Shown piece after piece: positions 1-59,900 of a DNA stretch of 64,000 nt. The stretch covers positions 24,118,001 through 24,182,000 of the forward strand of contig OZ004614.1 in assembly GCA_963924565.1 (NCBI GenBank), read 5' to 3'. Origin of the DNA: Ascidiella aspersa (Eukaryota). The stretch's first letter is position 1; each line of letters starts with the position of its first letter. The notes under the pieces are model-generated. The model worked only from the letters and a program-made list of their open reading frames with translations, searched no databases and was not told where the DNA came from. The position numbers were made by a program, and so were the translations under genes.

Positions 1-3000
1 AGGCTGGTGATAACCCGAGCAAGTGCATGTCACAGATGTAACAGCGTTGATGTTCAATGTCAGTATTGTAGATGTGAGATCTAATGCAGACGAACCTAAA
101 GTAAAAATGAAGTTGTAAATAATAAACTACCCAACAACTTACACGCAACCTTTTACACACGAACTACTAATTGACAAAAAATCTTCAACAATATACGTAG
201 CGGAAAAGTTCCTTAAGACAACACGTTCCTATGTTTAATTTAAAACTTTGAATACAATATTCTTTATTTCTATATTATTAAATATCTAAAAGTAAATTTA
301 ATTACCAACTAAAAACAAATTCCACGATCGAAACATTTAACATATTTTTATTCAAATTATAATAAAGCGATTTACCGACTGTAAGTTGAACTGTTGTTGA
401 ACCAGAACAAGTCCCAGCACTATTGCTTGCAGTGAACACGACATTTCCGGTATCAGACAAGGCGACAGAGTTGATGACGTAAGTAAAACTCGTTCCAACG
501 AAATTACTTTTAACCGTTGGGTTTGTTCCACCATGAGCAACAACCACGTTAAGAGGTTCGGTGAAAAAGCCAGAGATGGTTCCTGTGAATGTCAAACTGC
601 TTCCCAATGTTGGTGTGCTGGTTGGTGACGTCACAGTTAAGTTGCGAGGAACTGCGTTAAAAAAAATATTCATTTGACAGTGGTTATAAAGTTTCTCTTT
701 AGCATAGTTCTACCGTATTGTTTATTTGTCTTTGTGTGATCTTAAATTAACGAATTTTGCCCTTGTGGAAATCAATGACATACAAAATTGTGAATCTTAA
801 CTACCATCGATGGATAAAATATGCTATCATTTCTAAAACGTATATGTGTACACCAGAGGTTCATAAACATTTTTTTTTGTGCGACACAAGTTTAAATTTT
901 GTTAACACCTCGCGACCCGATTAAGACACGGAAACATAGTATAAATTATATTGATTTTTAGTGAATTTGGTCTTAAACAAGTAATGCCCTGTAATGAACT
1001 ATATTTGTTTTAAATTTATACATGTTGTATTTTAAAGAAAAGACTTGAATATCCCAAAATATTAATGATGCAATAATTCAGTTCAACAGGACAAAACCAA
1101 AGAAGTGTGTTTGATGCAATCATATATAAATTTTTAACAGTCAAATATTTGTCAAATTTAAATTGAATCTGTGCGACCCAATTTTACCCTTGTCGACCCC
1201 TTATGTGGATGAGGGCGTAAAGCAGTGGTCGGCAAACTGAGGGCCGCGGCCGAAATGTGGGCCGAAGAGCCAATTTTAGTGGGCAGCGAGTTACCTATTA
1301 ATAGCTTAGTATTATCCTGTAGTTGTGGGCCGCGTGATAGCCTAGCATTACATTCAATGCACTTTATTTTAAAAGCAAGCAAGGAGCCATGTAATATTTC
1401 ACCTTAAAATCAGAATCCATCACTGTTTTCGTAGTGGTTGCACGTAGTGGGCCTTTAATAGATCTGAATAGACTACTTTAGGCCGCGACAAAAAAAGTTT
1501 GCCGACCACTGATGGCCTAAAGGTTACTTTATTTAGAACCACCGTCGTATAAAGAAATAAATAGTCTTGTTGTTAGTTTTACTTCCGGACAATCTTAAAC
1601 CAAGCTATTCAATAACATTAACCTAATTGAATATGCTGTTGCTTCCAGGAAGTGTTTCAATTGTACAATTGTCTTTCCGGACAAATTTTATTAAACTAAT
1701 TGCTCATCAAAACTGATTTATTGTTTTCAAGCAGTAATATTGTTTGACCGAAGGAGTGAAAAAATTTTTTTTGCAGTAAACTCATTCTGCAGAATATCAG
1801 TGGCTCTCAAAAACCAAAAAAGAGGAATAATAGATACTTTCCCCTTTAGTTTGTAGTTAATCCGATCAGAGCAATTCACCTTGGTATTTGCATATGTAGT
1901 AAAGTGGGTGAGTACACAACGCATCTCCCCACTTCCAAGTGTATGTATAACTGCCTGTTGAACCGGATCGTGTTCCAGTAAACACCATGCAACTTCCACT
2001 ACCTGATGGTCCACTTCCGTATATCCATCCGTTGTATCCCGGTGTTGACCAACTACTGCCTCCTGTTTTAAACGATTTAATGCGACAGTAAACTATTTAA
2101 TATTTCACATGCATGCAAGCATAGGTATCGTTTGCTCCCTGTTTTTCTAAGTTTGTGTTTCTTTTGTTCTTGACAAAAGAGTTATATTTACAAAGAGAAA
2201 ACGTTGACACCCATGAATTCTTATCCCCATCGCTTTCTAGCTTTCTTGTTTTTCTAAGCCAAAATAAAGAAAATAGAAAGACTGAGAAGGAAAACAAAAT
2301 GCCCCCTTTTGAAGGGAGACAGGTTAGCATTAGGATTATCACACTTATTTCTGGAGAATCGTAAGGCCTGACTATCGCGGCCGGATATAACTTTTTTCCT
2401 ACCTCACCAATTAGTTTGTATTAAACGAAAGAAGAATCTATATGTATATTGTTTAATAAAAATTGTCATAAACTTTATGAAATTGTCGTTCAGTTAAATA
2501 GTTATTTTATCTATATTTGGATTTGCATCTGATAACAAAGCGGACAGTAAAAAGCAGGCCCAACTAACTGTTTAAGTTGGAAGTTTCCAGCATTTAGTGC
2601 ATAAACATTCTGAGTGTTATATTGCTTTAAACATAAAGATCAATACAGACAGCGTCGGCAAAACCTTTGTTGATGTACTGCGCCTACGGTATTCTGTTTG
2701 ATGAACCGTCCACAAAGTAAATAAATCAACTATTTTATTCGACATACTTGCCGAAACGTCATTCTGGACTTTTTGTATGCACAACCATATTACGACAAAA
2801 TATATATTTCAACATAATATTTTTTAGCAGCAAGTTTCGCAGTAATTAAACTTATAGTTGTGACGAACTTTAATGACAAGTTATATGTAAAATTTCGCAT
2901 ACTATTAAACAAATAGCCTCACTAGTAGTTAGTTTTGTTTAACATTTCGATATTTACACATTGTACGTTACAGTATTCGGTGTATGTAACCCTTAAAATA

Positions 3001-4017
3001 CGGACTTGATTAGGTTGTTCAGACTTTGGATTTAAAAACAAACAATATTTCACGATTTTATGCAAAACTTATCATCCTTAAATAACATGCCCAACCGATA
3101 AATAGAGTTAAACGTGCAACAATTGTGGGTTAAAGTTTCTTATGGTAACACAATTACCCGAATAGCTTGAAAATGTTGTTCCGTCTGGCCACTTGAAGTC
3201 GTTTCCAGTACGTTCCCCACCGATGAAAGCATCTGACACAAGATTTGTTTTGACACTTACAATAAACAGTCTTAGACACAATGTCGATGTTTGGTATATA
3301 CTTACAGACTTGACTGTCTTGAGGCCACCCGTTTCCAACCTTGTTGCTTGCGAAAGTGCTGAGGTGGTTTTGTGTTGCTTCGTCAGGAACACTTGCCAAG
3401 TTACCACCTCCGGCAATGCAAGCTGCCTTGGCGGTTGGTTGATTTACCTTGCTGCTTGAAAGCACGAAGTTCCTTCCTTTGCATGTTGTAGCGTCTGACA
3501 ACAAGTAAAATGCTCTTCACTTTTTTTCTTACTACAAAAAGGCTTTACACAACAACAAATACACGAAGAGAATCAAAAATGTGATGCCTTTGACAAAATC
3601 CTTATAAAAATGCGCGAATTAAAAACGAACAAACGATATCAAACACAACTAACGCTTAGGCCCAATGGTCGATATAATCCATTATTTTCAAGGGAAAATA
3701 TTGGGTTAATTCAAAGCATTTGAGTTTACAATAGGAGTGCGTATTTATTGCAAAAAGTAATTGTTGCCTTAAAAACAACTGATTGTCATGTAGTGTAGGT
3801 TTAGCATGGCTCGTAAATTTTTCTTGTTCTCAAACCAAACTACCTCCTATATTGGCTTTATTGCAATATATTTCGACAGCATGGAATTTGCAACTGAGAT
3901 GACTGGATATTTGACGAAATAACAAATAAATCTTTGTTTAACACTTAAAAAAAAATATCACTCACCTGTTTTGTCGATACCAACGGCAATTACCAGTATC
4001 AACGATAAGATAAACAT
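1..4017 (-). CDS. Receptor copy A, 5' part (signal peptide, CTLD, Ig1, start of Ig2); runs off the window
   Basis: Exons 4017-3966 (MFILSLILVIAVGIDKT), 3494-3306, 3232-3158, 2062-1880, 651-376, 95-<1. Phases match copies B and C, and sizes match except exons 1 and 4. The upstream ATG of B/C is GTG here, so the second ATG is used. Confidence 0.8.
1223..1511. mobile_element. hAT/Charlie-type MITE in intron 4 of receptor A
   Basis: Perfect TIR CAGTGGTCGGCAAAC / GTTTGCCGACCACTG; shared with copies B and C. Confidence 0.75.
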
Positions 4018-19065: not shown

Positions 19066-22000
19066 CTAATAAGCTCTTTCGTACACTGATTGGCCAGCAG
19101 CAGCGTTACCAATTCCAAACTGCTCGTATGCTGTGTCTTCACTTGCAGCAATCCTTGAGACGTTGTAAGCTTGACCAGGCGACTCGCCATTGGCTGATAC
19201 GTAGGCAACAGGAATGACGTAATCACTGTCGTCAGACGGATGGTTGTTGACGTCATAGCTGGGATGAGCAGCAAAGCTAGTGTTGACGTAGTTGTTGCAT
19301 TGTCCTCGAGATTGATCTTCAGCGTTGATGGACTTAGGGTCGTGACCTAGAATTAAATAAAGCGTTGAAAAAAAATATAAAATATTCTTAGGCACAAAAT
19401 TTTATTTATACACATGAAAATTCTTCAAATGACAAGACATATTTTGTTAATATCAGACACCAAGGTGTTCACAGTATATTTACCTGCTGTGGTTGGAGAA
19501 CGATTGTCACTTTTCCGTTTTTCGAGTTTCGCCAAGATTTGGTTTCTGAATGAAAAAAGCGCAAATATATTCACTTATATATTTGACAAAAACACAAATA
19601 TATTTCACAAAATGGCTGTCGGGGCTTTATAATACCCACCTCTTGATGTAAACAAGGACGGCCACTCCAATTAGTATTATTACTGCACAAGAAACTCCTA
19701 TTGGTGTAGCAACGTTGAGACTAGAAACAGACTGGTTTTCTGAAAATAAAATACTGTTCGCTATCCTGTTTGTATATTTGTGTTTAAAAGTCTTAACTTA
19801 AGATGTGATTAAAATTTTCAGTATACGCGAAATTCGAAGCAGCTTAACAAAAGAGCTTAAAAGTTGTGCATTACGTATAGGATAAATATAACAATAAAGT
19901 TGCCTTGTTTAAATATAGATTTACAAATCAACATCTACACTTTTTTATATGTGCCAGTATTTAATAAAAACATTGTGGAGTCTAGCATGATTTACTGTAA
20001 AGCATTTAAATGAAGTTTTATAGTCACCTATTGGCAAGTAACATACGCCATTCGATGGAAGAATTGTATTTCTGCACAATGGCGTAATTGGGTGAAAATC
20101 TGTCGTCACCGTGTCTCCCTCGTTTAACGTGACGTTATGAGTCAGTGTAATGAAAGGCGTCAGTGTTACTTCGGAGGTTGTGGTTTTTTGTTTTTTTTTT
20201 TTGCTTTTTTGTTGTTTTTGCTGGTTCTCTTAATTTTTAGCTACATACAAACGAAGATTTATGAATAACATAAATGTGAAAATCAATGCAAATGACATAC
20301 CTTTGCACTTGTTATAACTGAAACAGACGAAGTTGGAATTGTGATTTTGATTTGGCAGATTTTGTTTTGAAGGGTAAGTTTAGAAACGATTCCTGCAAAA
20401 ACGTTTGAAGTTGATCCAGAAACAGTTGGGGTTTGGGGGACTTTCCAAATCTCAGGAAACAGCTTGATCTAAATTATATTGTTTTAATTCGAAAATGTAA
20501 ACCAAAGAATCCTAACTATTTTTTTAAAAAAATAACGAAAATTAATGTTTTTGAACTTACTTGAATCTTGTAATCTTCATTACCAACCTGGGTCGGAAAT
20601 TCTGTGGAGTAAGCATAGTTTGCAGAAGCCGTCGTTTTGTAATTTTTCGCGATGTTAGTAAGCTTGTCATAACTTTGTGCAATCAGCTGAAAGTTGAAAT
20701 TCCTGGAATATTTTGTTTCGTCAATCCACTTCACAGTTATTTTGTCGTGGTGGCATTTGGTAGCTTCAGTAAAACGAACAACTAAAACATAAAAAATACA
20801 ATTATTGTTACAGAAAACCATTATGATAATGGAAACGGAAAAATCTGTAATTTCTGTTTATTTTGTTAGAACTAGAATATTACATTATACGTACTGGGAA
20901 AAACACAGAGAGTGGTTAACAGGAAGTTGCAATTCTTGATTTGTGATGTTCCGTTAACAAATGAAGGGCATTTGTCCGTTGCTAAAGTTGCATTCTCAGT
21001 ACCTGTGGTAAAGAAAAGTTGCAATTAATTTAGCCTTTATTTACTAAAATAGATATTTCTGGTAAAATTACTTTGTGTCCAAGCTGTAACCTTTGTAAGA
21101 GAGCTTCCTTTAAGATATTCCGACGACGGTAACTTGCCTCCGTGGTTCTTACAGTGGAGTTTGGCGTCCGTGTATTTTCTGCTTGTGTTATAGCTGACGG
21201 AAAACTGTCCATTGTCGAACCGCAAATCTGTGAAAACCGAATTTTTTAGGTTTGTGTAAAATACTCGCTTGTATGGGTTAGAATTTAGTTGTAAACACGG
21301 TCGCACTTGCGCTTTCTCGCTGTTTATAATAAACCAGAGTGGCCTTACATACCCAGCATATTGTTTTAAACTATTATTTGTTCATTTTTTGCGGACCTAA
21401 AAGGATAACTCATACAAAATGTCGTGCGAAATTCATATAATTGTATATTTTCTCCGTGTACAGTTTTTTGGGTGTAAACTCACCGTTACAATATTGCAAT
21501 GTTACACAAAACAACACTGAGGAATTACAAACGTTGCATAGGCCACAAAAAAGTGTTGTTACACAGAAAATAAAATCCATTAATTACCTTGGTTAATCAT
21601 CGGAAAAATATTCTCTGTAGCACCGACTTCATTTCGTGCCGAACACTTAACAGTTGCGTTGGCGCCAAATACCGCGGAAGCTTCTATTGTTAGTTGTGAC
21701 GTCACTGTGTTGATTGTACCGTGGATTGTGACGTAGGTTGGTGACGCGTTGCTGTTGATTGTGACGTTTTGGTCGTTGATGGTCCAGTGAAAAGAGGTCG
21801 ACTGGTCGGCGGCAAACGTACAATTCAACGACTGTGATTGGCTGAATTCTGCAGCTGGTGATGACGCGTTAAGAAACCTTGGGGCAACTGAAATGTTCAA
21901 AAATCGCAACCTTATTAAAAAAATTAAACCAGCAGGTGTGTCAAACATTTGCCCAAACATGCATTCACAATCTGGGCCCCGAAGGTCGCCGGTTCGAACC

Positions 22001-28000: not shown

Positions 28001-31000
28001 AACCTATTACATACCAACTACTGATTCACAAAAAAAATCTTTAGTAATAAGCATCGGAAAAGTTCTTTACGGGCCAACTCAAATTTATTTCATAACTTTG
28101 AATACTATATTGTTTATTTTCATAATTTCGAATATGATTCTATTTTAGTTGAACCTAATGAGAAAAATGTTCGCCGACATTATAATCTATAAGTCAATTT
28201 AAAAGATGTTGCAAGGACTTTTCAAAACTTTCTTGCATACCAAAGTTTGTAAACCAGTGGCATCATTTTTCCATGATTTTTAGAAATCTGTTTTAGGTGG
28301 GCGTTTATTTGACTTATCAAAAAGCTAAATTTATTACCAACTACAATCTTGATCGTGGCAACGGAAGTACAAGTTCCAGTACTATTGCTTAAAGTGAACA
28401 CGAAATCTCCGTTGTGTGACAAGGTGACGGGGTTGATGACGTAAGTAAAGCTCGTCCCAACGAAATTACTTATCACGTTGGTGTTTGTTCCACCATGAGA
28501 AACAACCACGTTAAGAGGTTCGGTGAAAAAGCCAGAGATGGTTCCTGTGAATGTCAAACTGCTTCCCAATATTGGTGTGCTGGTTGATGACGTCACATTA
28601 AAGTTGCGGGAAACTGTGTTAAAAATCCAGCATTTCATCATAACAGCATTATTCACTTTCTTTTGATTATAAAATTTCTCTTTTAGCTTAGTTCTGCCGT
28701 AATGTTTGTTTTTATTTGTATGATCTTAAATTTACGAATTGAATGTTTATCAAAGGTGCTGTAAAACTTAAATCCATATTGATCCTTGCAGAATCAATGG
28801 CATACAAAATTGTGAATCTTAACTACCATCGCTGGATAAAGTATGGTACCACTTCTAAAACCGTCTATGTTACACATCACTGGTTCGTAAACTTCTATAT
28901 GCGCGACATAAATTTATATTTTGTGAACACCTCGCGACCCGATTAAGACACGGAAACATAGTATAAATTATATTGATTTTTAGTGAATTTGGTCTTAAAC
29001 AAGTAATGCCCTGTAATGAACTATAATTTTTTTCAATTTATACATGGTTTATTAAAGGAAGACACTTGAATATCCCAATATATTAATGATGCAATAATTC
29101 AATTCAACAGGACAAAACCAAAGAAGTGTGTTTGATGCAATCATATATAAATTTTTAACAGTCAAATATTTGTCAAATTTAAATTGAATCTGTGCGACCC
29201 AATTTTACCCTTAGCGACCCTTATGTGGATGAGGGCCTAAAGCAGGGGTCCGCAAACTGAGGGCCGCGCTCGAAATGCGGGCCGAAGAGCCATTTTTAGT
29301 GGGCAGCAAGTTACCTATTAATAGCTTAGTGTTATCCTGTAGTTGTGGGCCGCGTGATAGCATGACATTCATTGCACGTTATTTTAAAAGCAAGCAAGGA
29401 GCTATGTAATATTTCACCTTAAAATCAGAATTCACCTCTGTTTTCGTAGTGGTTTTACGTAGTGGGTCTTCAATAGATCTGAATAGACTACTTGGGGCAG
29501 CGACAAAAAAAGTTTGCCGACCACGATGGCCTAAAGGCTACTTTATTTAGAACCACCGTCGTATAAATAAATAAATAGTCTTGCAGAACGGTTAGTTTAT
29601 TACTTCCAGGCCATCTTTAAGCTAGTCAATAACTTTAAACTAATTAAATATTCTGTTGCTTTCAGAGTGTTTCAATTGTACAATTGTCTTTCCGGACAAA
29701 TTTTATTAAACTAATTGCTCATCAAAACTGTTTTATTGTTTTCAAGCAGTAATGATGCTAAATTAAACACCGAACGAAGGTGGAGTAAAACAGTTTTTTT
29801 TGCAGTAAACACATCACGCAGAATATTAGAAGCTCTCAAATTCTAAAAGAGAGGTGCAACACATACTTTCCTTAGTTTGTAGTTATTCCGATCAGAGCAA
29901 TTCACCTTGGTTTTCACAAATGTAGTAGAATGTTCCATCGCACATCGCATCTCCCCACTTCCAAATGTAAGTATAAGGTGAGCTATATCGCGTCCCAGTT
30001 AACACCATACATATTCCGGGGCCTGACGGTCCAGTTCCACTAGCCCATCCGTTGTATCCCGGTGTTGACCAACTACTGCCTCCTGTTTTTAAATATTTAA
30101 TGCCACAGTAAATTATTTCATATTTCGTACATGTGCAAACATATAAGTATCGTTTGAAACCTGTTTGTCTAAATTTTTGTTTCTTTTATTTTTGACAGAA
30201 TTATGTTCACAAAAAGAAACCGTTGACACCCATGAGTTCATACCATGACCACTCTATTATTTGACTAAACTTAATAGAATGCCTGAGGAGGAGAACAAAT
30301 CATACTATTAAAGAGCGACAGGTTATCAGGAATCACTACACTTTGTTTTGGAAATAAAACGAAAATAAATCCTACTTGATCTGGGCGTCGTAGCCAGCAC
30401 TTATCGCGTCTGAAGAGCGGCAAAAATTCGCTTCTCTCCATATGCTGCTACCTACTTCTGTATCGTTCTGGTCCAAGAACAAAGCCCTGTGTGGTGTGAC
30501 TATCCTGACTTTCGAGAGCCGAATATAATTTTTTCATACTTCAATAATTTAGTTTTTGTTAAACAAAAAAAACTATATCTATACTACGAGATGTTGATGT
30601 TAAAAATGAATAAAAATATATTCGAAACGTTTAAAATGATACCTACTTCAGTATGGGCTTTGATATTCTTATTACGTCTTACTACAACCTCCAACCATTA
30701 TGCTCCAAAGTATATCTATACTATTTCATGAAAATTGTAAAAAGACGCGGACAGAGATTTGGTAAACCATGGGTTACGCAAGGCCGGCTCAACTAACTTT
30801 TTAGATTGGAAACTTACAGCATTAGATGCATATAAGTTCTGAGTATCATATTGCTTTAAACATAAAGACCAAAACGCACAGCGTCGGCAAAGCCTTTGTT
30901 GATGTATACTACGCCTACGGTATTCTGTATAGTGAACCGGGAACACACAATAAGACCTAAAAAGCAACAATACCAAAAGCAGAAAAAATCTATAAAACCA

Positions 31001-34000
31001 TACTATTAAGACCAACGACATTACATAACCAAATACGCAATAATATCCAGTACAGCTTAAAATCAAAATTGTCTGAATAAAACCTAAATTCATCGGAATA
31101 AGTCCCAAAATCATCGGAATGAGGCTTAAATTCTTCGCAATAAGGCCTAAATTTATCGGAATAAGTCATAAATTCATCGGAAGGTGGCCTAAATTTATCG
31201 GAATAAGTTGTACAGGGGTGGGTTTTGGGGTTAGTTAAAGTGTTGTTTAAGCCTGCTTCTGACCTTTTAGGTCTTATTCCGATTTAGACGGTACTAATAC
31301 CACAAGTTATTAGTCCTATTTTGGTCTAATTCCGAATTGTGTTTTATTTTGACGTTGGTGTTGTTCTTATCTCGGTCTTATGGCTGGAGTCCAATGAACC
31401 ATTCATACAGTAAATAAATCAACGATTTTTTTCGACATACTTCTTTTACTGAAACGTCATTCCGGACTTTTTGTATGCACAACCATATTATATCATAATA
31501 TATATTTCAACATAGGCTAATATATTTTAGCATGCAAATTTCGCTGTAATTAAACTCATAGTTTCGACGACCTTAAAAGAAAAGTTATGTGAACTTTCGC
31601 ATAATATTAATCAGAATAGCTCCCCTGGTATTTATTTTTGTTCGACGTTTCGATATTTTACACATTGTAGGCCTACGTTACAATATTCGGTTTATTTAAC
31701 CCTTAAAATACAGACTTCAGCAGGTTATCCAAACTCTAGATTTAAAAAAAAACAATATTTCACGATTTTTTGCAAAACTCATCATTCTTGAATAACATGC
31801 TCAACTGATAAGTAAAGTTTAAGCGTGCAACAATTTTGGGTTTGACTTTCTTATGGTAAAAATATTACCTGAATAGCTTGAAAATGTCGTTCCGTCTGGC
31901 CACTTAAAGTCGTTTCCAGTTCGTTCCCCACCGATGAAAGCATCTGACACAAATATTTGTTTTAACACTTGCAACAAACAATTTAGGCACAATGTCGATG
32001 TTTGGTATATACTTACAAACGTTTGAACCTCTAGTCCACCCGTTTCCAACCTTGTTGCTTGCGAGAGTACTCAGGTGGTTTTGTGTTGCTTCGTCAGGAA
32101 TACTTGCCAAGTTACCACCTCCACTAATGCAAGCTGACTTGGCGGTTGCTTGATTTACCTTGCTACTTGAAAGAACAAAGTTCCTTCCCTTGCATGTTGT
32201 AGCGTCTAAAGCAATACAGCAGTGGTCGGCAAACGTTTTTCAGTGTAATCACGCGCAGCGCGAAATAAATGAGTTTTGTGTTTCAAGTTGGCAAGACTTC
32301 CATTGAAAGGAAACGTGAAGCTTGAGGCAATTAAATAGATTCGAATATTGGTTTCGTTACCACCCCCAGCAATGCAAGCTGACTTGGCGGTGGCTTAAGC
32401 TACTTTGCTGTTTGAAAGCACAGAGTTTATTCCCTTGCATGCTGTAGCGCCTATAACGACACCTAAATGCTCTAAACAACAACTAACAATCACTATTATT
32501 TGACGTAGTAAGCAAGTAGTGAGGGATTGCGGCAGACTCTGACACGGGCCACATTATCATGTAAAACCGGAAACTGTCTGCGTGCCGCTTCCATCGCGGG
32601 CCGGTTCTGTTTTTTCTAGCCCAGTGGTTCTCAAAGTTTTTTCATATTCCTCCAAATTTTCACAGTGTATGGATATAATGAGCAAGGTGCATTTTTTTAT
32701 TTATCTAAGAGATAAAAGTGAACATTACAAAAGCAGGGTACAATTGAAAAACAATACAAAAATGCGAAGTACAATTTTACCGAACGAAATTTACATTACG
32801 TATTAACAAAGTGTTTTAATCAAGTAGACGTGAGCCAAGTGGCTCCCTTTGAGAACCACTGTTCTAGCTGGGTTTGCGTTAATTTCTTCAACCGAATCTA
32901 ACTATATATAGAACGTTTTAACCAAAATTAAGTTCGACGATTGTCAAAAATGTGATGCCATTTGACAAAACCATCAACAAAATGCGCGAAATACAAAAAT
33001 CGAACCACAGACATTATCACTAAATGCCCTAATATTCCAACCTTAACAACACTAGCCCCAAACAAGAACAAACAACCCAATGCCAAAACAGCGGCGCCCC
33101 AACGCCTCCGAACTAAAGCTCGAAACGTCGACACCAAAACATCTGATGCAGATCGATGACCCCCGATCGTCCTGTGGGGCACGAGTTTAGTTGTTCAACT
33201 TATAATACTTTATTCAACCGCATTGCGTTCTAATTGACGCTTTCGTTCTGAACTCCAACTTCAAGGTGCGTATCTAACTCGCAAGCCGCCACAAGACGTT
33301 CTGGTGATTAGAATTGTATTCGTTGATGAACGAACAACCAGTTTTAAATTATGTTAACAGCACCAGTCGATAGCTAAGAAAAGTTAGTTTTCAAGCTGAT
33401 AGCGGTCTTAAGGACCAACAGACAATCCAATGCTGACCGCAGTGATTATAATAGCATTTAACACTTTGCTGAGAGTTAGCGTTGCTTCCAAATAATACTG
33501 ACACTTAAGCAGAAACATCATAAACATACGGTAAACACAAAAACTCTTAGTCGGTAATAAATCATGCCTTCTATACTGTCCCTTACCCCTTGTTCTACAG
33601 TTTCAGGCGACATTTTGCCTATTTAGGCCGTATTCCGATGAATTTAAGCTTATTCCGTGGGGTTCATGTCTTTTTGAGACAATTTAGATCTTATTCTGTC
33701 ACTGATATTACTGCGTATTTGGCTTTATAATGTTTCTGGTCTTGATACTAGGGCACTGCAGATTAATCTTCTTTAGATATTGCTACATTGTAAGTCCATA
33801 CTCCTGACACCTCCAAGAAAGTCACGGCACACCTGGCATGGGCACACCGGTTGCGGAGCACTACGATAGACCAGTGTTTTCCGTGGGGGAAAATTACACC
33901 AGTTTAAAGCATTTATAGTTTTTATGAAGAGTGCGTATTTTTCACAGCCATATAGTGTCGCCAAAATTATTTGATTGTCATGTTGGTTTAGCATGGGGCG

Positions 34001-34437
34001 TAGCCTACCTTTTTTGTTGCATACCAAATCAATTTATTTCGATTACATGAATTTGTATCGTAATAAACATCAAATGTTTAGTTCACTCTGTATTAAACTT
34101 GGAACTGTGATAAATGATAACTTATTAAAATAATAATTTAAACCGAGTGTTGCTAATCCAGCAGTATTACATAAACAATCGACGTTTCGACTTCCTATAC
34201 AGAACGCCTTCATCAGGATACTGACATATCACGCAAAACAGATTCCTTACAAAAAACGTCGATTGATTATATATTACTGCTAGATGAGCAACAATTTATA
34301 TAGGCATGGCAGCAATAGCTTATTTCAATAATTTAAACGTTGTTCAAAACTTAGAAAACACAATAATACAAACCTGTTTTGTCGATTCCAACGGCCGTTA
34401 ACCATATCAAAGATAAGACAAACATCGGGTAAAACAT
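19066..34437 (-). CDS. Receptor copy B: same 24-exon CTLD-Ig receptor, with an apparent frameshift in exon 21 (truncated/secreted allele, pseudogene or homopolymer error)
   Basis: Exons 34437-34374, 32205-32017, 31943-31869, 30082-29906, 28613-28338, 27949-27838, 27365-27172, 26802-26691, 25750-25566, 24831-24714, 24646-24459, 24086-23969, 23577-23387, 23313-23202, 22558-22359, 21887-21588, 21227-21072, 21002-20895, 20781-20561, 20468-20301, 20240-20028, 19739-19640, 19545-19484, 19346-19066. All are colinear with copy C. Exon 21 is 213 nt versus 190 nt in C, giving TAA at 20168-20166. Confidence 0.8.
21975..22040 (+). mobile_element. Possible tRNA-derived SINE remnant (paralog ~50810-50865)
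   Basis: B-box GGTTCGAACCC in a GC-rich island; no cloverleaf. Confidence 0.4.
23661..23944. mobile_element. Near-palindromic MITE in intron 12 of receptor B
   Basis: ~120-bp imperfect inverted arms (TTAATGGTGAAAATAACGGCCCAAAT...ATTTGGGCCGTTATTTTCACCATTAA) with TTAA at both ends; the intron is only 62 nt in copy C. Confidence 0.8.
29243..29525. mobile_element. hAT-type MITE in intron 4 of receptor B (paralogous to 1223-1511)
   Basis: Degenerate TIRs; GCCTAAAG on both flanks. Confidence 0.7.
30939..31392. mobile_element. Non-autonomous DNA element in intron 3 of receptor B
   Basis: Absent at this site in A and C; TSD AGTGAACC / AATGAACC; internal repeats of CCTAAATTCATCGGAATAAG. Confidence 0.65.
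32356..32450 (-). pseudogene. Decayed partial duplicate of CTLD exon 2 in intron 1 of receptor B
   Basis: After acceptor gttatag it reads GATACKGINSVLSNSKVA*ATAKSACIAGGGN: an in-frame TAA, then truncation. Confidence 0.8.
32622..32861. mobile_element. hAT-type MITE
   Basis: TIR CAGTGGTTCTCAAAG / CTTTGAGAACCACTG; TSD TTCTAGCC / TTCTAGCT. Confidence 0.8.
34148..34293 (-). mobile_element. Hammerhead-like (Penelope-type) motif with 40-bp inverted repeat, intron 1 of receptor B
   Basis: Minus strand CTGATGA-A-GGCGTTC..GAAGTC-GAAACGTCGA (core 34216-34184); arms 34148-34187 and 34254-34293. Confidence 0.55.
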
Positions 34438-47911: not shown

Positions 47912-50900
47912 CTAGTAAGCTCTCTCGTACACTGATTGGCCAACAGCAGCGTTACCAATCCCAAACTGCTCGTATGCTGTGTCTTCACTTGCAGCAATCC
48001 TTGAGACGTTGTAAGCTTGACCAGGCGACTCGCCATTGGCTGATACGTAGGCAACAGGAATGACGTAATCACTGTCGTCAGATGGATGGTTGGTGACGTC
48101 ATAGCTGGGATGAGCAGCAAAGCTAGTGTTGACGTAGTTGTTGCATTGTCCTCGAGATTGATCTTCAGCGTTGATGGACTTAGGGTCGTGACCTAGAAAA
48201 AAATTAAGCGTTGAAAAAAATATAAAATATTCTTAGGCACAAAATTCTATTTTATACACATGAATATTCTTCAAATGACAAGATATATTTTGTTAATATC
48301 AGACACCAAGGTGTTCACAGTATATTTACCTGCTTGGGGTGGAGAACGATTGTCACTTTTCCGTTTTTCAAGCTTTGTCAAAATTTGGTTTCTGAATGAA
48401 AAAAGCGCAAATATATTCACTTATATATTTGACAAAAACACAAATATATTTCACAAAATGGCTGTCGGGTCATACAATACCCACCTCTTGATGTAAACAA
48501 GAATGGCCACTCCAATTAGTATTATTACTGCACAAGAAACTCCGATTGGGGTAGCGACGCTGAGACTAGAAACAGACTGATTTTCTGAAAATAAAATACT
48601 GTTCGCTAGCCTGTTAGTATATTTATGTTTAAAAGTTTTAACTTAAGTTGTGATTCAAATTTTGATTATACGCGAAATTTGGGGCAACTTAACAAAAGAG
48701 CTTATAGTTGTACATTACGTAAAAGCTGAATATAACAATGAAGTTGCATTGCGTAATTATTGATTTACAAATCAACATCTACACTTTTATATGTGCCAGC
48801 ATTTATTAAAAACATTGTGGAGTCTAGCATGATTTACTGTAAAGCATTTAAATGAAGTTTTATAGTCACCTATTGGCAGGTAACATACGCCATTCGATGG
48901 AAGAATTGTATTTCTGCACAATGACGTAATTAGGTGAAAATCTGACGTCACCGTGTCTCCCTCATTCAACGTGACGTCATGAGTCAGTGTAGATGAAGGC
49001 GTCAGTGTTATTTCGTAAGTTGTAGTTTTGTTGTTTTTGCTGGTTCTTTTAATTTTCAGCTACATACAAACAAAGATTTCAGAAAAATATACTTGGGTGA
49101 ATCAGTAATGCAAATGACATACCTTTGCACTTGTGATAACTGAAACAGACGAAGTTGGAATTGTGATTTTAATTTGGCAGATTTTGTTTTGAAGGGTAAG
49201 TTTAGAAGCGATTGCTGCAAACACGTTTGAAGTTGATCCAGAAACCATTGGGGTTTGGGGGACTTTCCAAATTTCAGGAAACATCTTGATCTAAATTATA
49301 TTATTTTAACTATTATAAAGTTTTTTGATTTTTGAAACAATGCAACACACAGTGTCGTAATTAGTTGGCTAAAAAAAGAACGAAAATGAATGGTGTTAAA
49401 CTTACTTGAATCTTGTAATCTTCATTACCAGGCAGGTTTCGAAATTCCGTGGAGTGAAAATAGTTTTTAGAAGCCGTCGTTTTGTAATTTTTTACGATGT
49501 TAATTGATTTGTCGGAACTTTGTGCAGTCAGCTGAAATTTGAAATCCCTGGAATATTTTGTTTCATCAATCCACTTCACAATTATTTTGTCGCTATGGCA
49601 CCGAGTAGCTTCAGTAAAACGAACAACTGAAACATAAAAAAGAGAATAATTGTTTCAGCAAACAGTTATGAAAATGGAAATGCAAAAAACAGTAATTTCC
49701 GTTTATTTTGTAAACTAGATTATTACATTATGCTTACTGGCAAAAACACAGAGAGTGGTTGACAGGAAGTTGCAATTCTTGATTTGTGATGTTCCATTCG
49801 CAAATGAAGGGCATTTGTCAGCATCTAAAGTTGCATTCTCAGTACCTGAGTTAAAAATAAGCAATTAATTGAGGTTCATTTACTAAAGTCAAACAATTTG
49901 GTTAAATTACTTTGGGTCCAAACCGCCAATTTTGAAAGCGAGCTTCCGTTAAGATATTCCGACGACGGTAACTTGCCTCCGTGGTTCTTACAGTGTAGTG
50001 AGCCATCCGAGTATTTTCTACTCGTGTTATAGCTGACGTAAAACAGTCCATTGTCGAACCGCAAATCTGTGAAAACCGAATTTTTTAGGTTTGTGTAAAA
50101 TACTCGCTTGTATGGGTTAGAATTTAATTGTAAACACGGTCGCACTTGCGCTTTCTCGCTGTTTATAATAAACCAGAGTGGCCTTACATATACCCAGCAT
50201 ATTGTTTTAAACTATTATTTGTTGATTTTTTGCGTACCTAAAAGGATAAATACGAAATCGTGCGAAATTCCTATAATTGTATAATTTCTCCGTGTACAGT
50301 TTTTTGGGTGTAAACTCACCGTTACAATATTGCAATGTTACAACAAAAAATACTGAGGAATCACAAACGTTGCATAGGCCACAAAAAAGTGTTGTTACAC
50401 AGAAAATAAAATATATTTATTACCTTGGTTAATCATAGCAAAAATATTCTCTGTAGTACCGACTTCATTTTGTGCCGAACACTTTACAGTCGCGTTGGCG
50501 CCAAATATCGCGGAAGCTTCTATTGTTAGTGACGTCACTGTGTCGAGGGACCTGTGGATTGTGACGTAGGTTGGCGACGCGACGCTGTTGATTGTAACGT
50601 TTTGGTCGTTGATTGTCCAATGAAAGGTTGTCGACTGGTCGGCGGCAAACGTACAATTCAACGTCTGTGATTGGCTGAATTCTGCACCTGGTGATGACGC
50701 GTTAAGAAACCTTGGGGCAACTGAAATGTTCAAAAATCGCAACCTTATTAAAAAAAAATTAAACCAGCAGGTGTGTCAAACATTTGCTCAAACATACATT
50801 CATAATCTGGGCCCCAAAGGTCGCCGGTTAGAACCTACGAGTCCCTGGCGTTAAGTTACTTAAGTTTAGCTTGAAATAAAAAAAAATAAACAACAAATAG

Positions 50901-56900: not shown

Positions 56901-59900
56901 TTTTATTTTCTATGATATGGAATTGACGAACAGAATGTATTTTAAATGGACTGTAAAACTCAGGGCAATCCAAATTTGCCCTTGCAGAATCGATGGCATT
57001 CGAAAAATGAATCTTAACTACCATCGCTTCAAAAAACGTCTATATCATACATCAGAGGTTCCCAAACTGTTTAACGTGCGACATAAATTTAAATTTAGGG
57101 AACACCCGAGACCCAATTAAGACACGGAAACATACTATAAATTATACTGATTTACATTGAATTTGGTCTAAAACAAATATTTCCCTTTAATGAACAATAA
57201 CGGTATTTCAATACATACATGATTTATTAAAGAAAGAGACTTGAATACCCCAAAACTATTAATGATGCAACAATTCAGTTCATAAAGACGAAACCAAAGA
57301 AGTGTGTTTAATGCAATTATATATAAATTTACAACAGTCAAATATTTGTCAAATTTAAATTGAACCTGCGCGACCCAAATTTACCCTTAGCGACCCTTCT
57401 ATTTGGATGAGGGCCGAAAGCAGTGGTCGGCAAACTGTGTGCCGCGCTCGAAATGCGGGCCGAAGAGCCATTTATAGTCGGCCGCGAGTTACCTATTAAT
57501 AGCTTAGTGTTATCATGTAGTCGTGGGCAGCGTGATAGCCGTACATTCATTGTACTTTATTTTAAAAGTCGATGTGTCATAGAATTTTTAAATTGGCTCA
57601 GCTTGAAAAGGCCCACGTACCAAATGTGATCCTGTGAGCCTGTGGATTGTGTCAAACTATATTTTTTGTCAACTTTAACTATATGTAAACCCAAAATTTT
57701 TCGCGCATCGCGCGTATATCCTTCGTTCTGTAGCAGGGGCGGTCAACTTCTCCAGTCGGCGGGCCCGATGTGGGAAACTGAAGTACTTGGCGGGCCGGAT
57801 TCCTGATCGATATATTAATACTACTGCCATGACCTACATGTTTTGTCGCATGATGGCGGCTAATGTTCTGCTCTTTAAACACGACAATACTTTCATTGCC
57901 CTGCAAACAACTAATATTTTATTGCTGACTTGAAAAGGAACTTCGGCATCCAATATTTATTAAACTTTACGTTTCTCGGCACAATCCAAGGAATAATATT
58001 GATTTAAACTCTAAATCTAAATTTGGAACACAATAAGATCTAAAAATCAACAATACCTAAGGCAGAAAATCAATAATACCATAGTATTAACACCAACGAC
58101 ATAATAAAGCCAAACACGCAGTAATATCTACGACAGAATAATAACTACATCGTCTAAATAAGATACCAATCTGTCGAAGTAAGTCCTAAATTCTTTGGAA
58201 CAAGGCCTCTATGACCAAAATCACGCCTTAAACTGTGGGAGAAGGTATGGGACGATGGGGGCCATGGAATTGGCCGTTTTGGTTTTAAATTTTGGGCGCC
58301 CTGGTTTGAAGCCCCTGTTTTGACACCTGATTATCTGGCCCTGTTTGGGGTAATTGGTGGCTGGTGGGTAATGAGTGGGGTTAGAAAATGGGTTAGGGTT
58401 GAAATTATTAGTGGAGTTAGTGATGTACTTAGGGGTGAGGTTTGGGGTTAGGTAAAATGTTTTATAGGCCTGATTTAGGTATTATTCCGACGGGTTTATG
58501 ACTTATTCCGATTTAGACGGTTATAGGACTATTTGATATTAATACTATTTTGGTCTTATTCCGTACCGGTAATGTGTGCTATAGTTTTATTTCCGAACTG
58601 TGTGATATTGATGTTGTTCTTATTTCGATGTTATGGCTTGAGTCCTCTAATTTTAACCCAAAACAAAACCTAAAGAATAACTAACAATCATTATTATTTG
58701 ACGTAGTAAGAAAGTAATTGGGGATTGCGGTAAACTGTGGCCGCGGGTCCCATTATCATGTAAAACCGGAAACTGCGGGCTTCTCAAAATCCTATCGCGG
58801 GCCTGATCCGGCCCGCGGGCCGTATGTTGGCCGCCCCTGTTCTATAGTATGTTTTTCATAAGGCATGGCATTGTTTTTGCAATCAAGACGCTGTGTACTA
58901 TTTCACCTTAAAATCGAATATCCTGAATCCGCCACTGTTTTCATAGTGGTTTTATGTCGTAAGCCGTTAATAGCTCTGAAAACAGTACTTTGGGCCGTTA
59001 CAAAAAAATTTGCCGACCGCTGGACTAAAGGCTACTTTATTTAGAACCACTGTCGAATACAGAAATAATTAGTTTGCAAGCCGTCAGCATATTCTTCCGG
59101 ACCATCTTAAATCAAGCTAGTCAATAACTTTAAACTAAATGAATATGTTGCTGCTCCCAGCCACTGTTTCAATTCTACAATTGTCATTTCGGCAAAATTT
59201 AATTAAAGTTTTATTAATTTCTCATCAAAACTGTTTTATTATTTTCCAGTAGTAATGTTGTTAAATTACACTCACAAATTCCAAAATAGATTGTGTAACA
59301 GATACTTTTCTTTCAAGTTTGTACAGTTAGACCGATCAGACCAATTCACCTTGATATTCGCATATGTAGTACAATATTCCAGTGCACAACGCATCTCCCC
59401 ACTTCCAAGTGTAAGTAAAACTGCCTGATGAGCCGGATCGTGTTCCAGCAAACACCATACAAGTTCCACTGCCTGAAGGTCCACTTCCACTTGTCCATCC
59501 ATTGTATCCCGTTGTTGACCAAATGCTGCCTGATTAAACGAGTTGTGTTTGTTTTGTTTTTGACAGAATAATGTTTTCAAAGAGAAAACGTTGACACCCA
59601 TGAACTCTTATCACAATGACTTTGTTAGTTTGCTAAGCCAAAATAAACACAATTGAAAGAAAAGCAAATTCCCCTTTTGCAGAGCGACAGGTAGCATTAG
59701 GATTATCACACTTTTTTCTGGAGAACTGTAATGCCTGACTTTTGCGGCCGGGCATGATTTTTTCATACCTCATAAAATAGTTTATGTTAAACGAAGAATC
59801 TATATGTATATTATTTAATACAAATTCTCGAACTTTATAAAATTTTCGTTCAGTTTAATAATTCTTTCATCTATAATAGTTCGGATTTGCATCTGACAAC

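What the first reader, a model, noticed from the sequence alone, without database searches (positions are those of the whole stretch)
29906..30082. Hypervariable ligand-binding loops in the N-terminal CTLD versus a near-invariant signalling tail
Seen: exon 4 reads WIYGSGPSGSGSCMVFTGTRSGSTGSYTYTWKWGDALCTHPLYYICK in A, WASGTGPSGPGICMVLTGTRYSSPYTYIWKWGDAMCDGTFYYICE in B, and WTSGSGPSGSGTCMVFAGTRSGSSGSFTYTWKWGDALCTGILYYICE in C. By hand count B differs from A and from C by ~17-18 substitutions plus in-frame indels per ~60 aa, sparing Cys/Trp. The end of exon 2 also varies (WPQDSQ / WTRGSN / WTGGSE). By contrast the last exon differs at 2 of ~93 aa between B and C, and the adjacent intron 4 has ~100-bp identical runs between A and B. 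Inference: diversifying selection on the binding face.
Basis: partly seen in the sequence, partly recalled or inferred. Interest (0 to 1): 0.78.

Follow-up and report, generated by a model that had tools for sequence, protein, structure and literature searches.

The report
Sea-squirt lectin receptor exon: mosaic divergence
The flagged exon encodes the likely binding half of a lectin-type domain in a large tandem receptor family; its contrast with the near-identical tail mostly reflects DNA copying between neighbouring genes, with only a few binding-site residues showing adaptive change.

Summary
Window 29906-30082 (minus strand) is exactly exon 4 of gene B. The three peptides, the 17-18 substitutions plus in-frame indels, the variable end of exon 2, the 2-of-91 difference in the last exon and the ~100-nt identical intron runs all check out.

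- Whole-exon dN/dS of exon 4 is 0.27-0.40, the same as the rest of the ectodomain (0.41).
- Exon 4 differs more because both dS and dN are about twice as high.
- The "invariant" tail has dS about 0.05-0.06, with equally similar intron and 3' flank. Its dN/dS over 11 array genes (about 0.46) is no lower than exon 4's.
- For the pair B/L031 the gradient is reversed.

Site models on 31 paralogs still find about 5% of exon-4 codons with omega about 3 (M1a-M2a 2ΔlnL 25.7). One site is robust: the residue before the third Cys, "WGDA-x-C". Four more are suggestive. They flank the EPN- and WND-equivalent positions of the lectin fold.

No 3D mapping, allele data or RNA evidence could be obtained.

The parts
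29906..30082 (-). Gene B exon 4: C-terminal half of the N-terminal C-type-lectin-like domain (long-loop region, beta3 to beta5)
   Evidence: Splice sites and frame. Weak PDB CTLD hits. The exon-4 profile aligns to the C-terminal half of a Lectin_C protein with hhalign probability 94.6%, E 6.8e-8.
1880..2062 (-). Gene A exon 4 (60 full codons)
59350..59529 (-). Gene C exon 4 (59 full codons)
32017..32205 (-). Gene B exon 2: N-terminal half of the CTLD, ending in the variable WTRGSN segment
   Evidence: Pfam Lectin_C positions 2-38, E 0.0074, below the cut-off. The exon-2 profile hits CTLDs of FcRY, PLA2R, DEC-205 and MMR at E 5.7e-8 to 1.1e-3.
31869..31943 (-). Gene B exon 3 (AFIGGERTGNDFKWPDGTTFSSYS; WIGL-like and W-x-DG motifs)
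   Evidence: M0 omega 0.33 with no positive class.
3306..3494 (-). Gene A exon 2
3158..3232 (-). Gene A exon 3
61933..62121 (-). Gene C exon 2
61785..61859 (-). Gene C exon 3
29943..29945 (-). Gene B codon 46 of exon 4 (Met; alignment column 49, 'WGDA-x-C'): the one robustly positively selected site
   Evidence: NEB posterior 1.00 under M2a and M8. Site test p 8.2e-6 with alpha 0.01, beta 4. Top site in both subsets. Codons are xxG with the third base kept.
30042..30044 (-). Gene B codon 13 of exon 4 (Ala; alignment column 13, residue after YNGW): suggestive positively selected site
   Evidence: Posterior 1.00. Site test p 0.051. 9 different residues plus a gap; codons mostly xxA.
28338..28613 (-). 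Gene B exon 5 (first Ig-like exon), used as control
   Evidence: M0 omega 0.587; M1a-M2a 2ΔlnL 7.3.
19069..19346 (-). Gene B last exon (Tyr-rich cytoplasmic tail plus stop codon)
   Evidence: 11 array copies are 92-100% identical.
47915..48192 (-). Gene C last exon
29150..30830 (-). About 1.7-kb block around B exon 4 that is 3-6% diverged from paralog L031, in a background of 0-2 mismatches per 150 nt
28900..29750 (-). Part of B intron 4 that is 87-99% identical to copy A (identical runs of 110 and 100 nt), next to the 79-82% identical exon 4
34372..34437 (-). Candidate exon 1 of gene B (MFYPMFVLSLIWLTAVG..., signal-peptide-like; ATG at 34437; the 3' end is not determined)
   Evidence: The counterpart in C starts at 63323.

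Best explanation
Exon 4 encodes the loop-bearing C-terminal half of the N-terminal C-type-lectin-like domain. The domain belongs to a type-I receptor from a family with at least 51 exon-4 copies in this genome, 18 of them in this minus-strand array.

The family evolves by tandem duplication plus patchy gene conversion. The 3' ends (from roughly exon 16 onward, including TM and tail) have been homogenised across the array, so the tail looks invariant. The block holding exon 4 has the oldest divergence of the five exons compared across the array, at synonymous and non-synonymous sites alike. Averaged over the exon, selection is purifying or neutral: about 62% of codons at omega about 0.15 and about 33% at omega 1.

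On top of this mosaic, a handful of codons change amino acid faster than silent sites:
- the residue before the third Cys (WGDA-x-C), which is robust;
- the residue after the YNGW Trp, the third position of the EPN-equivalent 'GPS', and two residues after the third Cys, which are suggestive.

By motif alignment these sit around the canonical CTLD binding site. I infer focal diversification of ligand specificity among paralogs. The loops are not hypervariable as a whole, and the gradient is not driven by selection.

Shown: exon structure, counts, dN/dS, intron divergence, mosaic blocks, site-model statistics. Inferred: ligand binding at these residues, conversion as the homogenising mechanism, signalling role of the tail.
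For: - Exon limits and peptides.
- Family size: 51 hits, 47 without internal stops.
- Pairwise exon 4 dS 0.38-0.70, dN 0.12-0.19, omega 0.27-0.35.
- B versus C by exon: exon 4 dS 0.52, dN 0.21, omega 0.40; ectodomain without exon 4 dS 0.247, dN 0.101, omega 0.41; last exon dS 0.051, dN 0.009.
- B versus C non-coding: intron JC distances run from 0.435 (intron 3) to 0.045 (intron 22); 3' flank p 0.047.
- 55 pairs of 11 genes: tail dS 0.063, dN 0.029; exon 4 dS 0.445, dN 0.151; exon 2 0.246/0.115; exon 5 0.171/0.112.
- Mosaic blocks: B-L031, A-B; L034 and L035 are identical in exons 2-5 but differ at 6 tail residues.
- Site models, exon 4, 31 paralogs: M1a-M2a 2ΔlnL 25.66, M7-M8 28.80, M8a-M8 15.08; 5% of sites at omega 3.1-3.3.
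- Site test with site-specific synonymous rates: site 49 p 8e-6, site 51 p 0.0098, site 20 p 0.037, site 13 p 0.051, site 53 p 0.06.
- Subsets keep the signal. PHI finds no within-exon recombination in exon 4, p 0.41.
- All 12 null simulations gave a 2ΔlnL below the observed value.
- Motif mapping GPS = EPS/EPN and WGD = WND by hhalign to a Lectin_C protein.
Against: - The codon models are my own implementation. Branch-length proportions were fixed from IQ-TREE M0, I used NEB rather than BEB, and each tree came from a single 177-nt exon.
- One of 12 null replicates gave 2ΔlnL 8.98, so the 17-gene local subset result (9.83) is not safe on its own.
- After Bonferroni correction over 62 codons only site 49 survives.
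- The sequences are paralogs that exchange DNA. Exons 2 and 5 show within-exon recombination (PHI p 0.015 and 0.006), which can inflate such tests.
- Exon 5 (Ig) also shows a weak positive class and a higher mean omega, so the signal is not exclusive to the lectin domain.
- At the end of exon 2, sites 66 and 69 have high synonymous rates too, with no beta above alpha.
- No 3D model, no allele data and no RNA evidence were obtained.
- Only 33 of the 51 exon-4 hits were analysed.
Confidence: 0.6

Rival explanations
1. Pervasive diversifying selection makes the ligand-binding loops of the N-terminal CTLD hypervariable, while strong purifying selection keeps the signalling tail invariant. On this view the 5'-to-3' gradient is a selection gradient.
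For: - Exon 4 has the highest dN of the exons compared (0.151 against 0.112-0.115).
- 11 of 59 exon-4 columns carry 6 or more residues.
- The LRTs for a positive class are significant.
- In the A-B pair exon 4 is more diverged than adjacent intron 4.
Against: - Whole-exon omega is 0.27-0.40, equal to the rest of the ectodomain.
- dS rises with dN: exon 4 dS 0.445 against 0.063 in the tail.
- Tail omega (about 0.46) is not lower than that of exon 4.
- Introns and the 3' flank show the same gradient.
- The gradient is reversed for B-L031.
- Only about 5% of codons fall in the omega>1 class.
Confidence: 0.12
2. No adaptive component at all. The lectin domain evolves under relaxed constraint, and the apparent omega>1 sites are artefacts of conversion among paralogs, a short alignment, indel-prone Gly/Ser-rich loops and approximate model fitting.
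For: - A third of exon-4 codons fit omega = 1.
- Mosaic conversion is evident.
- One null replicate reached 2ΔlnL 8.98.
- Only one site passes multiple-test correction.
- Control exons 2 and 5 also give nominally significant LRTs, and they do show recombination.
Against: - Site 49 has 10 residues encoded by xxG codons with the third base kept and alpha about 0, p 8e-6.
- Site 13 shows the same pattern with xxA codons.
- PHI for exon 4 is not significant.
- The signal persists in two subsets.
- The observed LRT (25.7) is nearly three times the largest of the 12 null values.
Confidence: 0.22
3. A mutational cause. The Gly/Ser-rich, low-complexity coding stretches of exon 4 (GSGPSGSG, TRSGSPGS) undergo slippage or locally raised mutation. 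That would give in-frame indels and raised divergence at all site classes without any selection for diversity.
For: - Indels fall in the G/S-rich stretches.
- dS of exon 4 is the highest of the exons.
- 7 of the 9 B-L031 mismatches in exon 4 cluster within 31 nt of the GPSG region.
Against: - The raised divergence extends about 1 kb into the flanking introns as a block with sharp edges. This fits tract boundaries better than a coding-sequence hotspot.
- The strongest sites (49, 13) are not in the repeats and keep their third base.
Confidence: 0.06

Closest known systems
Rodent Ly49/KLRA and other NK-complex C-type-lectin-like receptor clusters
   Same: Large tandem arrays of CTLD receptors that evolve by duplication and gene conversion, with exchange of signalling ends and rapid change in the ligand-contact part. 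This is recalled knowledge; from the papers PMC2213150, PMC2910302 and PMC5350243 I saw only the search listing and the abstract starts. Here there are 18 genes in the array, a homogenised tail and focal omega>1 sites near the CTLD binding site.
   Different: Ly49 receptors are type-II proteins with a single C-terminal CTLD. Here the gene has a signal-peptide exon, an N-terminal CTLD, many Ig-type exons, a second CTLD-like part and a TM exon near the 3' end, making it type I. No sequence relationship beyond the CTLD fold was found.
Botryllus Fester family / Fester co-receptors (PMC12582321; passages read via find)
   Same: Tunicate germline-encoded receptor families in clusters, with ectodomain diversity and conserved tyrosine signalling motifs on partner chains.
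   Different: FF and FcoR are Ig plus Sushi proteins. The paper's only mention of a C-type lectin refers to Ly49 (1 occurrence). Their diversity is allelic and haplotypic, whereas here only paralogs could be compared. Allorecognition is untested here.
CTLDs of the mannose-receptor family (FcRY, PLA2R, DEC-205, MMR) and lithostathine/REG
   Same: These are the nearest solved sequences. The exon-2 profile hits them at E 5.7e-8 to 1.1e-3. Exon 4 hits lithostathine at E 0.02.
   Different: The similarity is only fold-level and per half-domain, and the domain architecture differs. The EPN and WND Ca2+/sugar motifs are replaced by GPS and WGD.
Concerted evolution of multigene families (for example KIR/LILR) with mosaic conversion tracts
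   Same: Neighbouring paralogs share near-identical segments that include introns, with sharp block edges and pair-specific patterns.
   Different: No formal tract or donor inference was done here. The block containing exon 4 appears to be the least homogenised part, and the reason for that is open.

Membership tests
C-type lectin-like domain superfamily (Pfam Lectin_C, PF00059) | Match to the family model above its curated cut-off | tested here: inconclusive
Searched exon by exon only. Exon 2 scores 17.4 bits against a cut-off of 22.6 (E 0.0074, model positions 2-38); exons 3 and 4 have no hit.
C-type lectin-like domain superfamily (Pfam Lectin_C, PF00059) | Four framework cysteines C1-C4 (alpha1, beta3, after beta4, beta5) | tested here: met
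   C25 of exon 2 is invariant in 24 of 24 sequences. C24, C47 and C55 of exon 4 are invariant in 25 of 25. Their spacing matches a Lectin_C protein. One paralog outside that alignment, L041, has Tyr at C3.
C-type lectin-like domain superfamily (Pfam Lectin_C, PF00059) | Profile-level similarity of both halves to recognised CTLDs | tested here: met
   The exon-2 profile hits PDB CTLDs at E 5.7e-8. The exon-4 profile aligns to P0005 (Pfam Lectin_C E 5.9e-36, 2 stretches) with hhalign probability 94.6%, E 6.8e-8. However, the exon-4 profile found nothing in PDB at E <= 0.01.
Ca2+-dependent carbohydrate-recognition domain (classical C-type lectin) | EPN or QPD motif in the long-loop region | tested here: not met
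   The aligned position reads G-P-S. P18 is invariant and G17 is conserved in 90% or more.
Ca2+-dependent carbohydrate-recognition domain (classical C-type lectin) | WND motif in beta4 | tested here: not met
   It reads W-G-D in most paralogs (also WGN, WQD, WHD, WED, WGA, WGG).
Receptor family under diversifying selection at the binding site | Site-class LRTs reject neutral models, with omega>1 sites identified | tested here: met
   Exon 4: M1a-M2a 25.66, M7-M8 28.80, M8a-M8 15.08. Site 49 p 8e-6. The analysis is approximate and home-made, and the null check had only 12 replicates.
Receptor family under diversifying selection at the binding site | Whole-domain or whole-exon dN/dS at or above 1, or above the rest of the protein | tested here: not met
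   Omega is 0.27-0.40 for exon 4 against 0.41 for the rest of the ectodomain. M0 omega is 0.50 against 0.59 for Ig exon 5.
Receptor family under diversifying selection at the binding site | Selected sites cluster on one surface of the fold | not testable with these tools
   This needs a model of the spliced domain, which was left out. Only linear mapping next to the EPN and WND positions was possible.
Concerted evolution / gene conversion of the 3' end | Low dS together with equally low divergence of adjacent non-coding DNA, and pair-specific mosaic blocks | tested here: met
   Tail dS 0.063; flank p 0.03-0.08 for most pairs. B-C intron 22 JC 0.045 and 3' flank p 0.047. Mosaic blocks. GENECONV-type tract tests were not run.
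NK-complex Ly49/KLR-type receptors | Type-II membrane topology with a single C-terminal CTLD | tested here: not met
   There is a signal-peptide-like exon 1 upstream, the CTLD lies in exons 2-4, and the TM exon is near the 3' end.

The most novel reading that the evidence does not exclude
The exon-4 block is actively kept out of the homogenisation that sweeps the rest of these genes. Selection would then maintain at least 18 different binding specificities, set largely by a few residues around the former Ca2+ site of the lectin fold, on a shared, conversion-homogenised signalling tail. That would make this array a germline-encoded recognition repertoire in a sea squirt, built on a CTLD-Ig type-I scaffold and convergent with Ly49/KIR-type systems.
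Probability: 0.3. Interest if true: 0.6.

Novelty: new member of a known kind. Interest (0 to 1): 0.4.

Why it matters
If the focal signal holds, it marks which residues of a lineage-specific chordate receptor family set ligand specificity. It would also give a concrete case of binding-site diversity being kept while signalling ends are homogenised, outside vertebrates and on a different scaffold.

As it stands, the main value is corrective. The striking 'variable tip / invariant tail' contrast is mostly a conversion and duplication mosaic, so it should not be cited as evidence of selection. Four literature searches found no paper describing this family.

Tried and rejected
Database searches
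- The 1.84-billion-protein library searched with B exon 4 gave 16 hits. The best was E 1.7e-9, on repetitive PKD/Ig-type proteins, and there was no orthologue. No full-length database protein was therefore available for a fold.
- The exon-4 profile against PDB found nothing at E <= 0.01.
- Pfam on single exons stayed below the cut-off.

Codon-model work
I replaced it with a nucleotide tree plus codon branch lengths.
- The first grid run gave NaN because of zero rates. I repeated it with a minimum rate of 0.01.
- The first B-C exon table had three exon starts off by 1-2 nt, corrected.

Reads
- Only Logan contigs of 3 runs from one study exist, and no run is recorded as RNA.
- 19 of the 33 'other letters' rows fall at the known B-L031 mismatch positions. 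I treated these as paralog cross-mapping, not alleles. Inside exon 4 only positions 29923 and 29934 differ, and both match L031.

Considered and rejected
- That A, B and C are each other's closest relatives: B's nearest exon 4 is L031, 98.5 kb away.
- That the end of exon 2 is positively selected: its synonymous rate is high too.

Left out
All codon analyses were run per exon.
- No paper supplements were consulted.
- Tunicate identity rests on earlier scan notes plus one weak check of my own: a GH6 hit of 28.1 bits, just above the 27-bit cut-off. That a GH6 domain marks tunicates among animals is recalled.
Full report
WHAT IS THERE

The window has 35% GC and no N. It holds three tandem segmental copies spaced 28-30 kb apart. 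Each copy carries a multi-exon receptor gene on the minus strand. Gene A has only its 5' exons inside the window; genes B and C are complete.

The finding's coordinates, 29906-30082, are exactly exon 4 of gene B. The exon is 177 nt, with an AG acceptor, a GT donor, phase 1 at both ends and 58 whole codons. Exons 2, 3 and 4 together encode one C-type-lectin-like domain that follows a signal-peptide-like exon 1 (ATG at 34437 in B and 63323 in C). Downstream come Ig-type exons split in two, a second lectin-like part, a TM exon and a Tyr-rich last exon.

I searched the gene model exon by exon only. I left out joining exons 2-4 into one domain for Pfam, folding or fold search.

IS IT A LECTIN DOMAIN?

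Each exon alone gives weak evidence:
- Exon 2 matches Pfam Lectin_C positions 2-38 at 17.4 bits, below the 22.6 cut-off. Exons 3 and 4 have no Pfam hit.
- Exon 4 hits lithostathine and other CTLDs in PDB at E 0.02 to 1.

Profiles built from paralogs do better:
- The exon-2 profile hits CTLDs of FcRY, PLA2R, DEC-205 and the mannose receptor at E 5.7e-8 to 1.1e-3.
- The exon-4 profile aligns to the C-terminal half of a database protein that Pfam calls Lectin_C (E 5.9e-36), with hhalign probability 94.6% and E 6.8e-8.
- The exon-4 profile found nothing in PDB at E <= 0.01.

The four framework Cys are invariant in the paralogs aligned; L041, not in that set, has Tyr at the third. The hhalign alignment puts 'G-P-S' at the EPN position and 'W-G-D' at WND, so the classical Ca2+/sugar site is not kept. 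That the EPN and WND residues form the primary binding site of classical C-type lectins is recalled knowledge.

THE OBSERVATION

The exon is not unusually variable on average, though. Column entropy is 0.80 bits, against 0.84 for Ig exon 5 and 0.76 for exon 2.

FAMILY

A six-frame search of the window's own genome (308.6 Mb, 75 contigs) with B exon 4 gives 51 matches. Of these, 47 have no internal stop, and 18 lie in this minus-strand array at C8 24.01-24.56 Mb. B's closest exon 4 is neither A nor C (about 68-70% identity). It is a gene 98.5 kb away, L031, at 95%.

No close relative exists among 1.84 billion representative proteins; the best E-value was 1.7e-9, on unrelated repeat proteins.

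I analysed exon 4 from 33 of the 51 hits, which is 31 sequences after dropping two exact duplicates (L035 and L029). Smaller sets were available for the other exons: exon 2 from 28 genes, exon 3 from 27 and exon 5 from 20. A row was dropped where an exon lay outside the fetched stretch or lacked clean splice borders.

WHOLE-EXON RATES

Nei-Gojobori estimates for exon 4:

| Pair | dS | dN | omega |
|---|---|---|---|
| A-B | 0.70 | 0.19 | 0.27 |
| A-C | 0.38 | 0.12 | 0.32 |
| B-C | 0.47 | 0.17 | 0.35 |

B versus C along the whole gene, over 22 exon blocks:

| Region | dS | dN | omega |
|---|---|---|---|
| Exon 4 | 0.52 | 0.21 | 0.40 |
| Ectodomain without exon 4 | 0.247 | 0.101 | 0.41 |
| TM plus cytoplasmic exons | 0.12 | 0.025 | 0.21 |
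| Last exon | 0.051 | 0.009 | - |

The last exon has only 3 silent and 2 replacement differences. Exon 4 therefore differs more because it is about twice as diverged at both kinds of site. Selection on it is not different in kind from the rest of the ectodomain.

THE GRADIENT IS IN NEUTRAL DNA TOO

For B versus C, intron distances (JC) are 0.435 for intron 3, 0.175 for intron 4 and 0.2-0.4 through the middle of the gene. They drop to 0.041 (intron 16), 0.044 (intron 21) and 0.045 (intron 22), and the 3' flank has p 0.047.

The tail exon has 11 copies in the array at 92-100% amino-acid identity; the other 15 matches are 44-59%. Averages over 55 pairs of those 11 genes:

| Segment | dS | dN | omega |
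|---|---|---|---|
| Tail exon | 0.063 | 0.029 | about 0.46 |
| Exon 4 | 0.445 | 0.151 | 0.34 |
| Exon 2 | 0.246 | 0.115 | 0.47 |
| Exon 5 | 0.171 | 0.112 | 0.65 |

The 640 nt flanking the tail exon have p 0.03-0.08 in most pairs. The tail is 'invariant' because the DNA is young or homogenised, not because it is more constrained.

The pattern is also pair-specific:
- B and L031 have dS 0 in exons 2, 3 and 5, 0.134 in exon 4 and 0.096 in the tail.
- L034 and L035 are identical in exons 2-5 but differ at 6 tail residues. Tails were assigned to genes by their 10-14 kb distance.

MOSAIC BLOCKS AROUND EXON 4

- B versus L031 shows 0-2 mismatches per 150 nt almost everywhere. From about 30830 to 29150 it shows 4-10 per 150 nt in most windows. 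That block includes exon 4 (9 mismatches in 177 nt) and both flanking introns.
- A versus B is 87-99% identical through most of intron 4, with identical runs of 110 and 100 nt. Identity is only 74-82% across exon 4 and the first ~100 nt of intron 4. It is 84% in the ~100 nt of intron 3 next to the exon and 44-72% in most windows further upstream.

Exon 4 therefore sits in a block with its own, older history. Its raised divergence is shared with adjacent intron and is not specific to the exon.

SITE-LEVEL TESTS

I wrote a codon-likelihood engine. Its M0 log-likelihood of -2535.930 reproduces IQ-TREE's -2535.9296. Topology and relative branch lengths were fixed from IQ-TREE. Kappa, a length scale and the class parameters were optimised.

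Exon 4, 31 paralogs, 62 columns:
- M0 omega is 0.50.
- M2a fits 62% of sites at omega 0.155, 33% at 1 and 4.8% at 3.35.
- LRTs: M1a-M2a 2ΔlnL 25.66 (p 2.7e-6), M7-M8 28.80, M8a-M8 15.08.
- Posteriors: 1.00 for columns 13 and 49, and 0.83-0.91 for column 20.

A grid test that lets each site have its own synonymous rate gives the following:

| Column | p |
|---|---|
| 49 | 8.2e-6 (alpha 0.01, beta 4) |
| 51 | 0.0098 |
| 20 | 0.037 |
| 13 | 0.051 |
| 53 | 0.06 |

In the same test 19 of 62 sites are under purifying selection at p < 0.1. Only column 49 survives a 62-fold correction. At column 49 the codons are ATG, TTG, ACG, GCG, GGG, TCG, AAG, CAG and a few others, so the third base is mostly kept. 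Column 13 is mostly xxA.

Robustness:
- 17 local genes: 2ΔlnL 9.83.
- 26 genes without the long branches and the Cys-less paralog: 2ΔlnL 16.84.
- Column 49 is on top in both subsets.
- PHI shows no within-exon recombination in exon 4 (p 0.41), but does in exon 2 (p 0.015) and exon 5 (p 0.006).
- Twelve simulations under the fitted M1a gave 2ΔlnL 0-1.64 in 11 replicates and 8.98 in one. The observed 25.7 stands out, but nominal p-values near 0.01 from this procedure are not trustworthy.

Controls:
- Exon 5 has M0 omega 0.587 and 2ΔlnL 7.3.
- Exon 2 has omega 0.652 and 2ΔlnL 17.5. However, its end-of-exon sites 66 and 69 also have high synonymous rates, and the exon recombines.
- Exon 3 has omega 0.33 and no positive class.

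WHERE THE SITES LIE

By the hhalign alignment:
- Column 13 is the residue after the conserved loop Trp.
- Column 20 is the third position of the EPN-equivalent.
- Column 49 is two residues after 'WGD' and immediately before the third Cys.
- Columns 51 and 53 follow that Cys.

In classical lectins these flank the primary binding site (recalled). Clustering in 3D could not be tested.

READS

Only assembled contigs of three runs from one study hold the stretch, and none is recorded as RNA. Laid on 28200-32300, 19 of the 33 differing positions coincide with B-L031 mismatch positions. I read these as paralog cross-mapping. Nothing can be said about alleles or expression.

VERDICT

The selection reading of the gradient is not supported, because the gradient is a conversion and duplication mosaic. 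Diversifying selection is supported only for one codon robustly, and for about four more suggestively, near the canonical lectin binding site.

The most novel reading still open is that the exon-4 block is shielded from homogenisation in order to keep different specificities.

Four full-text searches found no description of this family. For the Botryllus receptor paper I read passages only. For the NK-receptor papers I saw the listing and abstract starts only.

Noticed in passing
window 32209-32553 (minus strand): There is a degenerate second copy of the start of exon 2, including the end of the preceding intron (...GVVIGATACKGINSVLSNSKVA*ATAKSACIAGGGNE...), with an in-frame stop. It lies just upstream of the real exon 2 of gene B. 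A second exon-2-like hit is also seen in L031 and L040 (L022 covers the same gene as L040).
   Followed up: partly
window 30529-30802 and 30940-31487 (intron 3 of gene B): Summed contig depth is 10^4 to 10^5, against about 10^2 elsewhere, with many loose ends at 30709-30713, 30938-30939 and 31392. This suggests high-copy repeats inside intron 3. The length of intron 3 varies greatly among paralogs.
   Followed up: no
window about 57570-58868 (intron 4 of gene C): An insertion of about 1.3 kb is present in C but absent from A and B.
   Followed up: no
L041 (G000:C8 about 24406362), exon 4: This paralog has Tyr in place of the third framework Cys (WGDASYFASL). The frame is open, so it may be a decaying gene or a variant fold.
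   Followed up: no
L034/L035 with tails L053/L059: Two neighbouring genes are identical in exons 2-5 but differ at 6 of 91 residues in the tail exon. Each tail is identical to that of a different third gene (L041 and L043). This is direct evidence of exchange of 3' ends. Tails were assigned to genes by distance only.
   Followed up: partly
window 19072-19344 (tail exon of B): All 8 tyrosines of the 91-residue tail are kept in all 11 array copies (NNYVNT, PSYD/NV, SDYVIPVAYVSA, QAYN/SV, TAYEQF, SVYERA). I saw no canonical ITIM or ITAM by eye, and the motif reading was not tested.
   Followed up: no
G000:C5:19613851-19614090: A single Glyco_hydro_6 match (28.1 bits, cut-off 27, E 2.2e-4) with none in the 14 control genomes. 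This is consistent with the cellulose-synthase gene known from tunicates (recalled), and so with the earlier notes' guess of a sea squirt.
   Followed up: partly
window 21588-21900 versus 50424-50730 and onward to the 3' end: B-C identity jumps to 93-99% from about exon 16 to beyond the stop codon. It is interrupted by less similar patches (exons 17-19 have dS 0.16-0.31), so the homogenised 3' region is itself patchy.
   Followed up: partly
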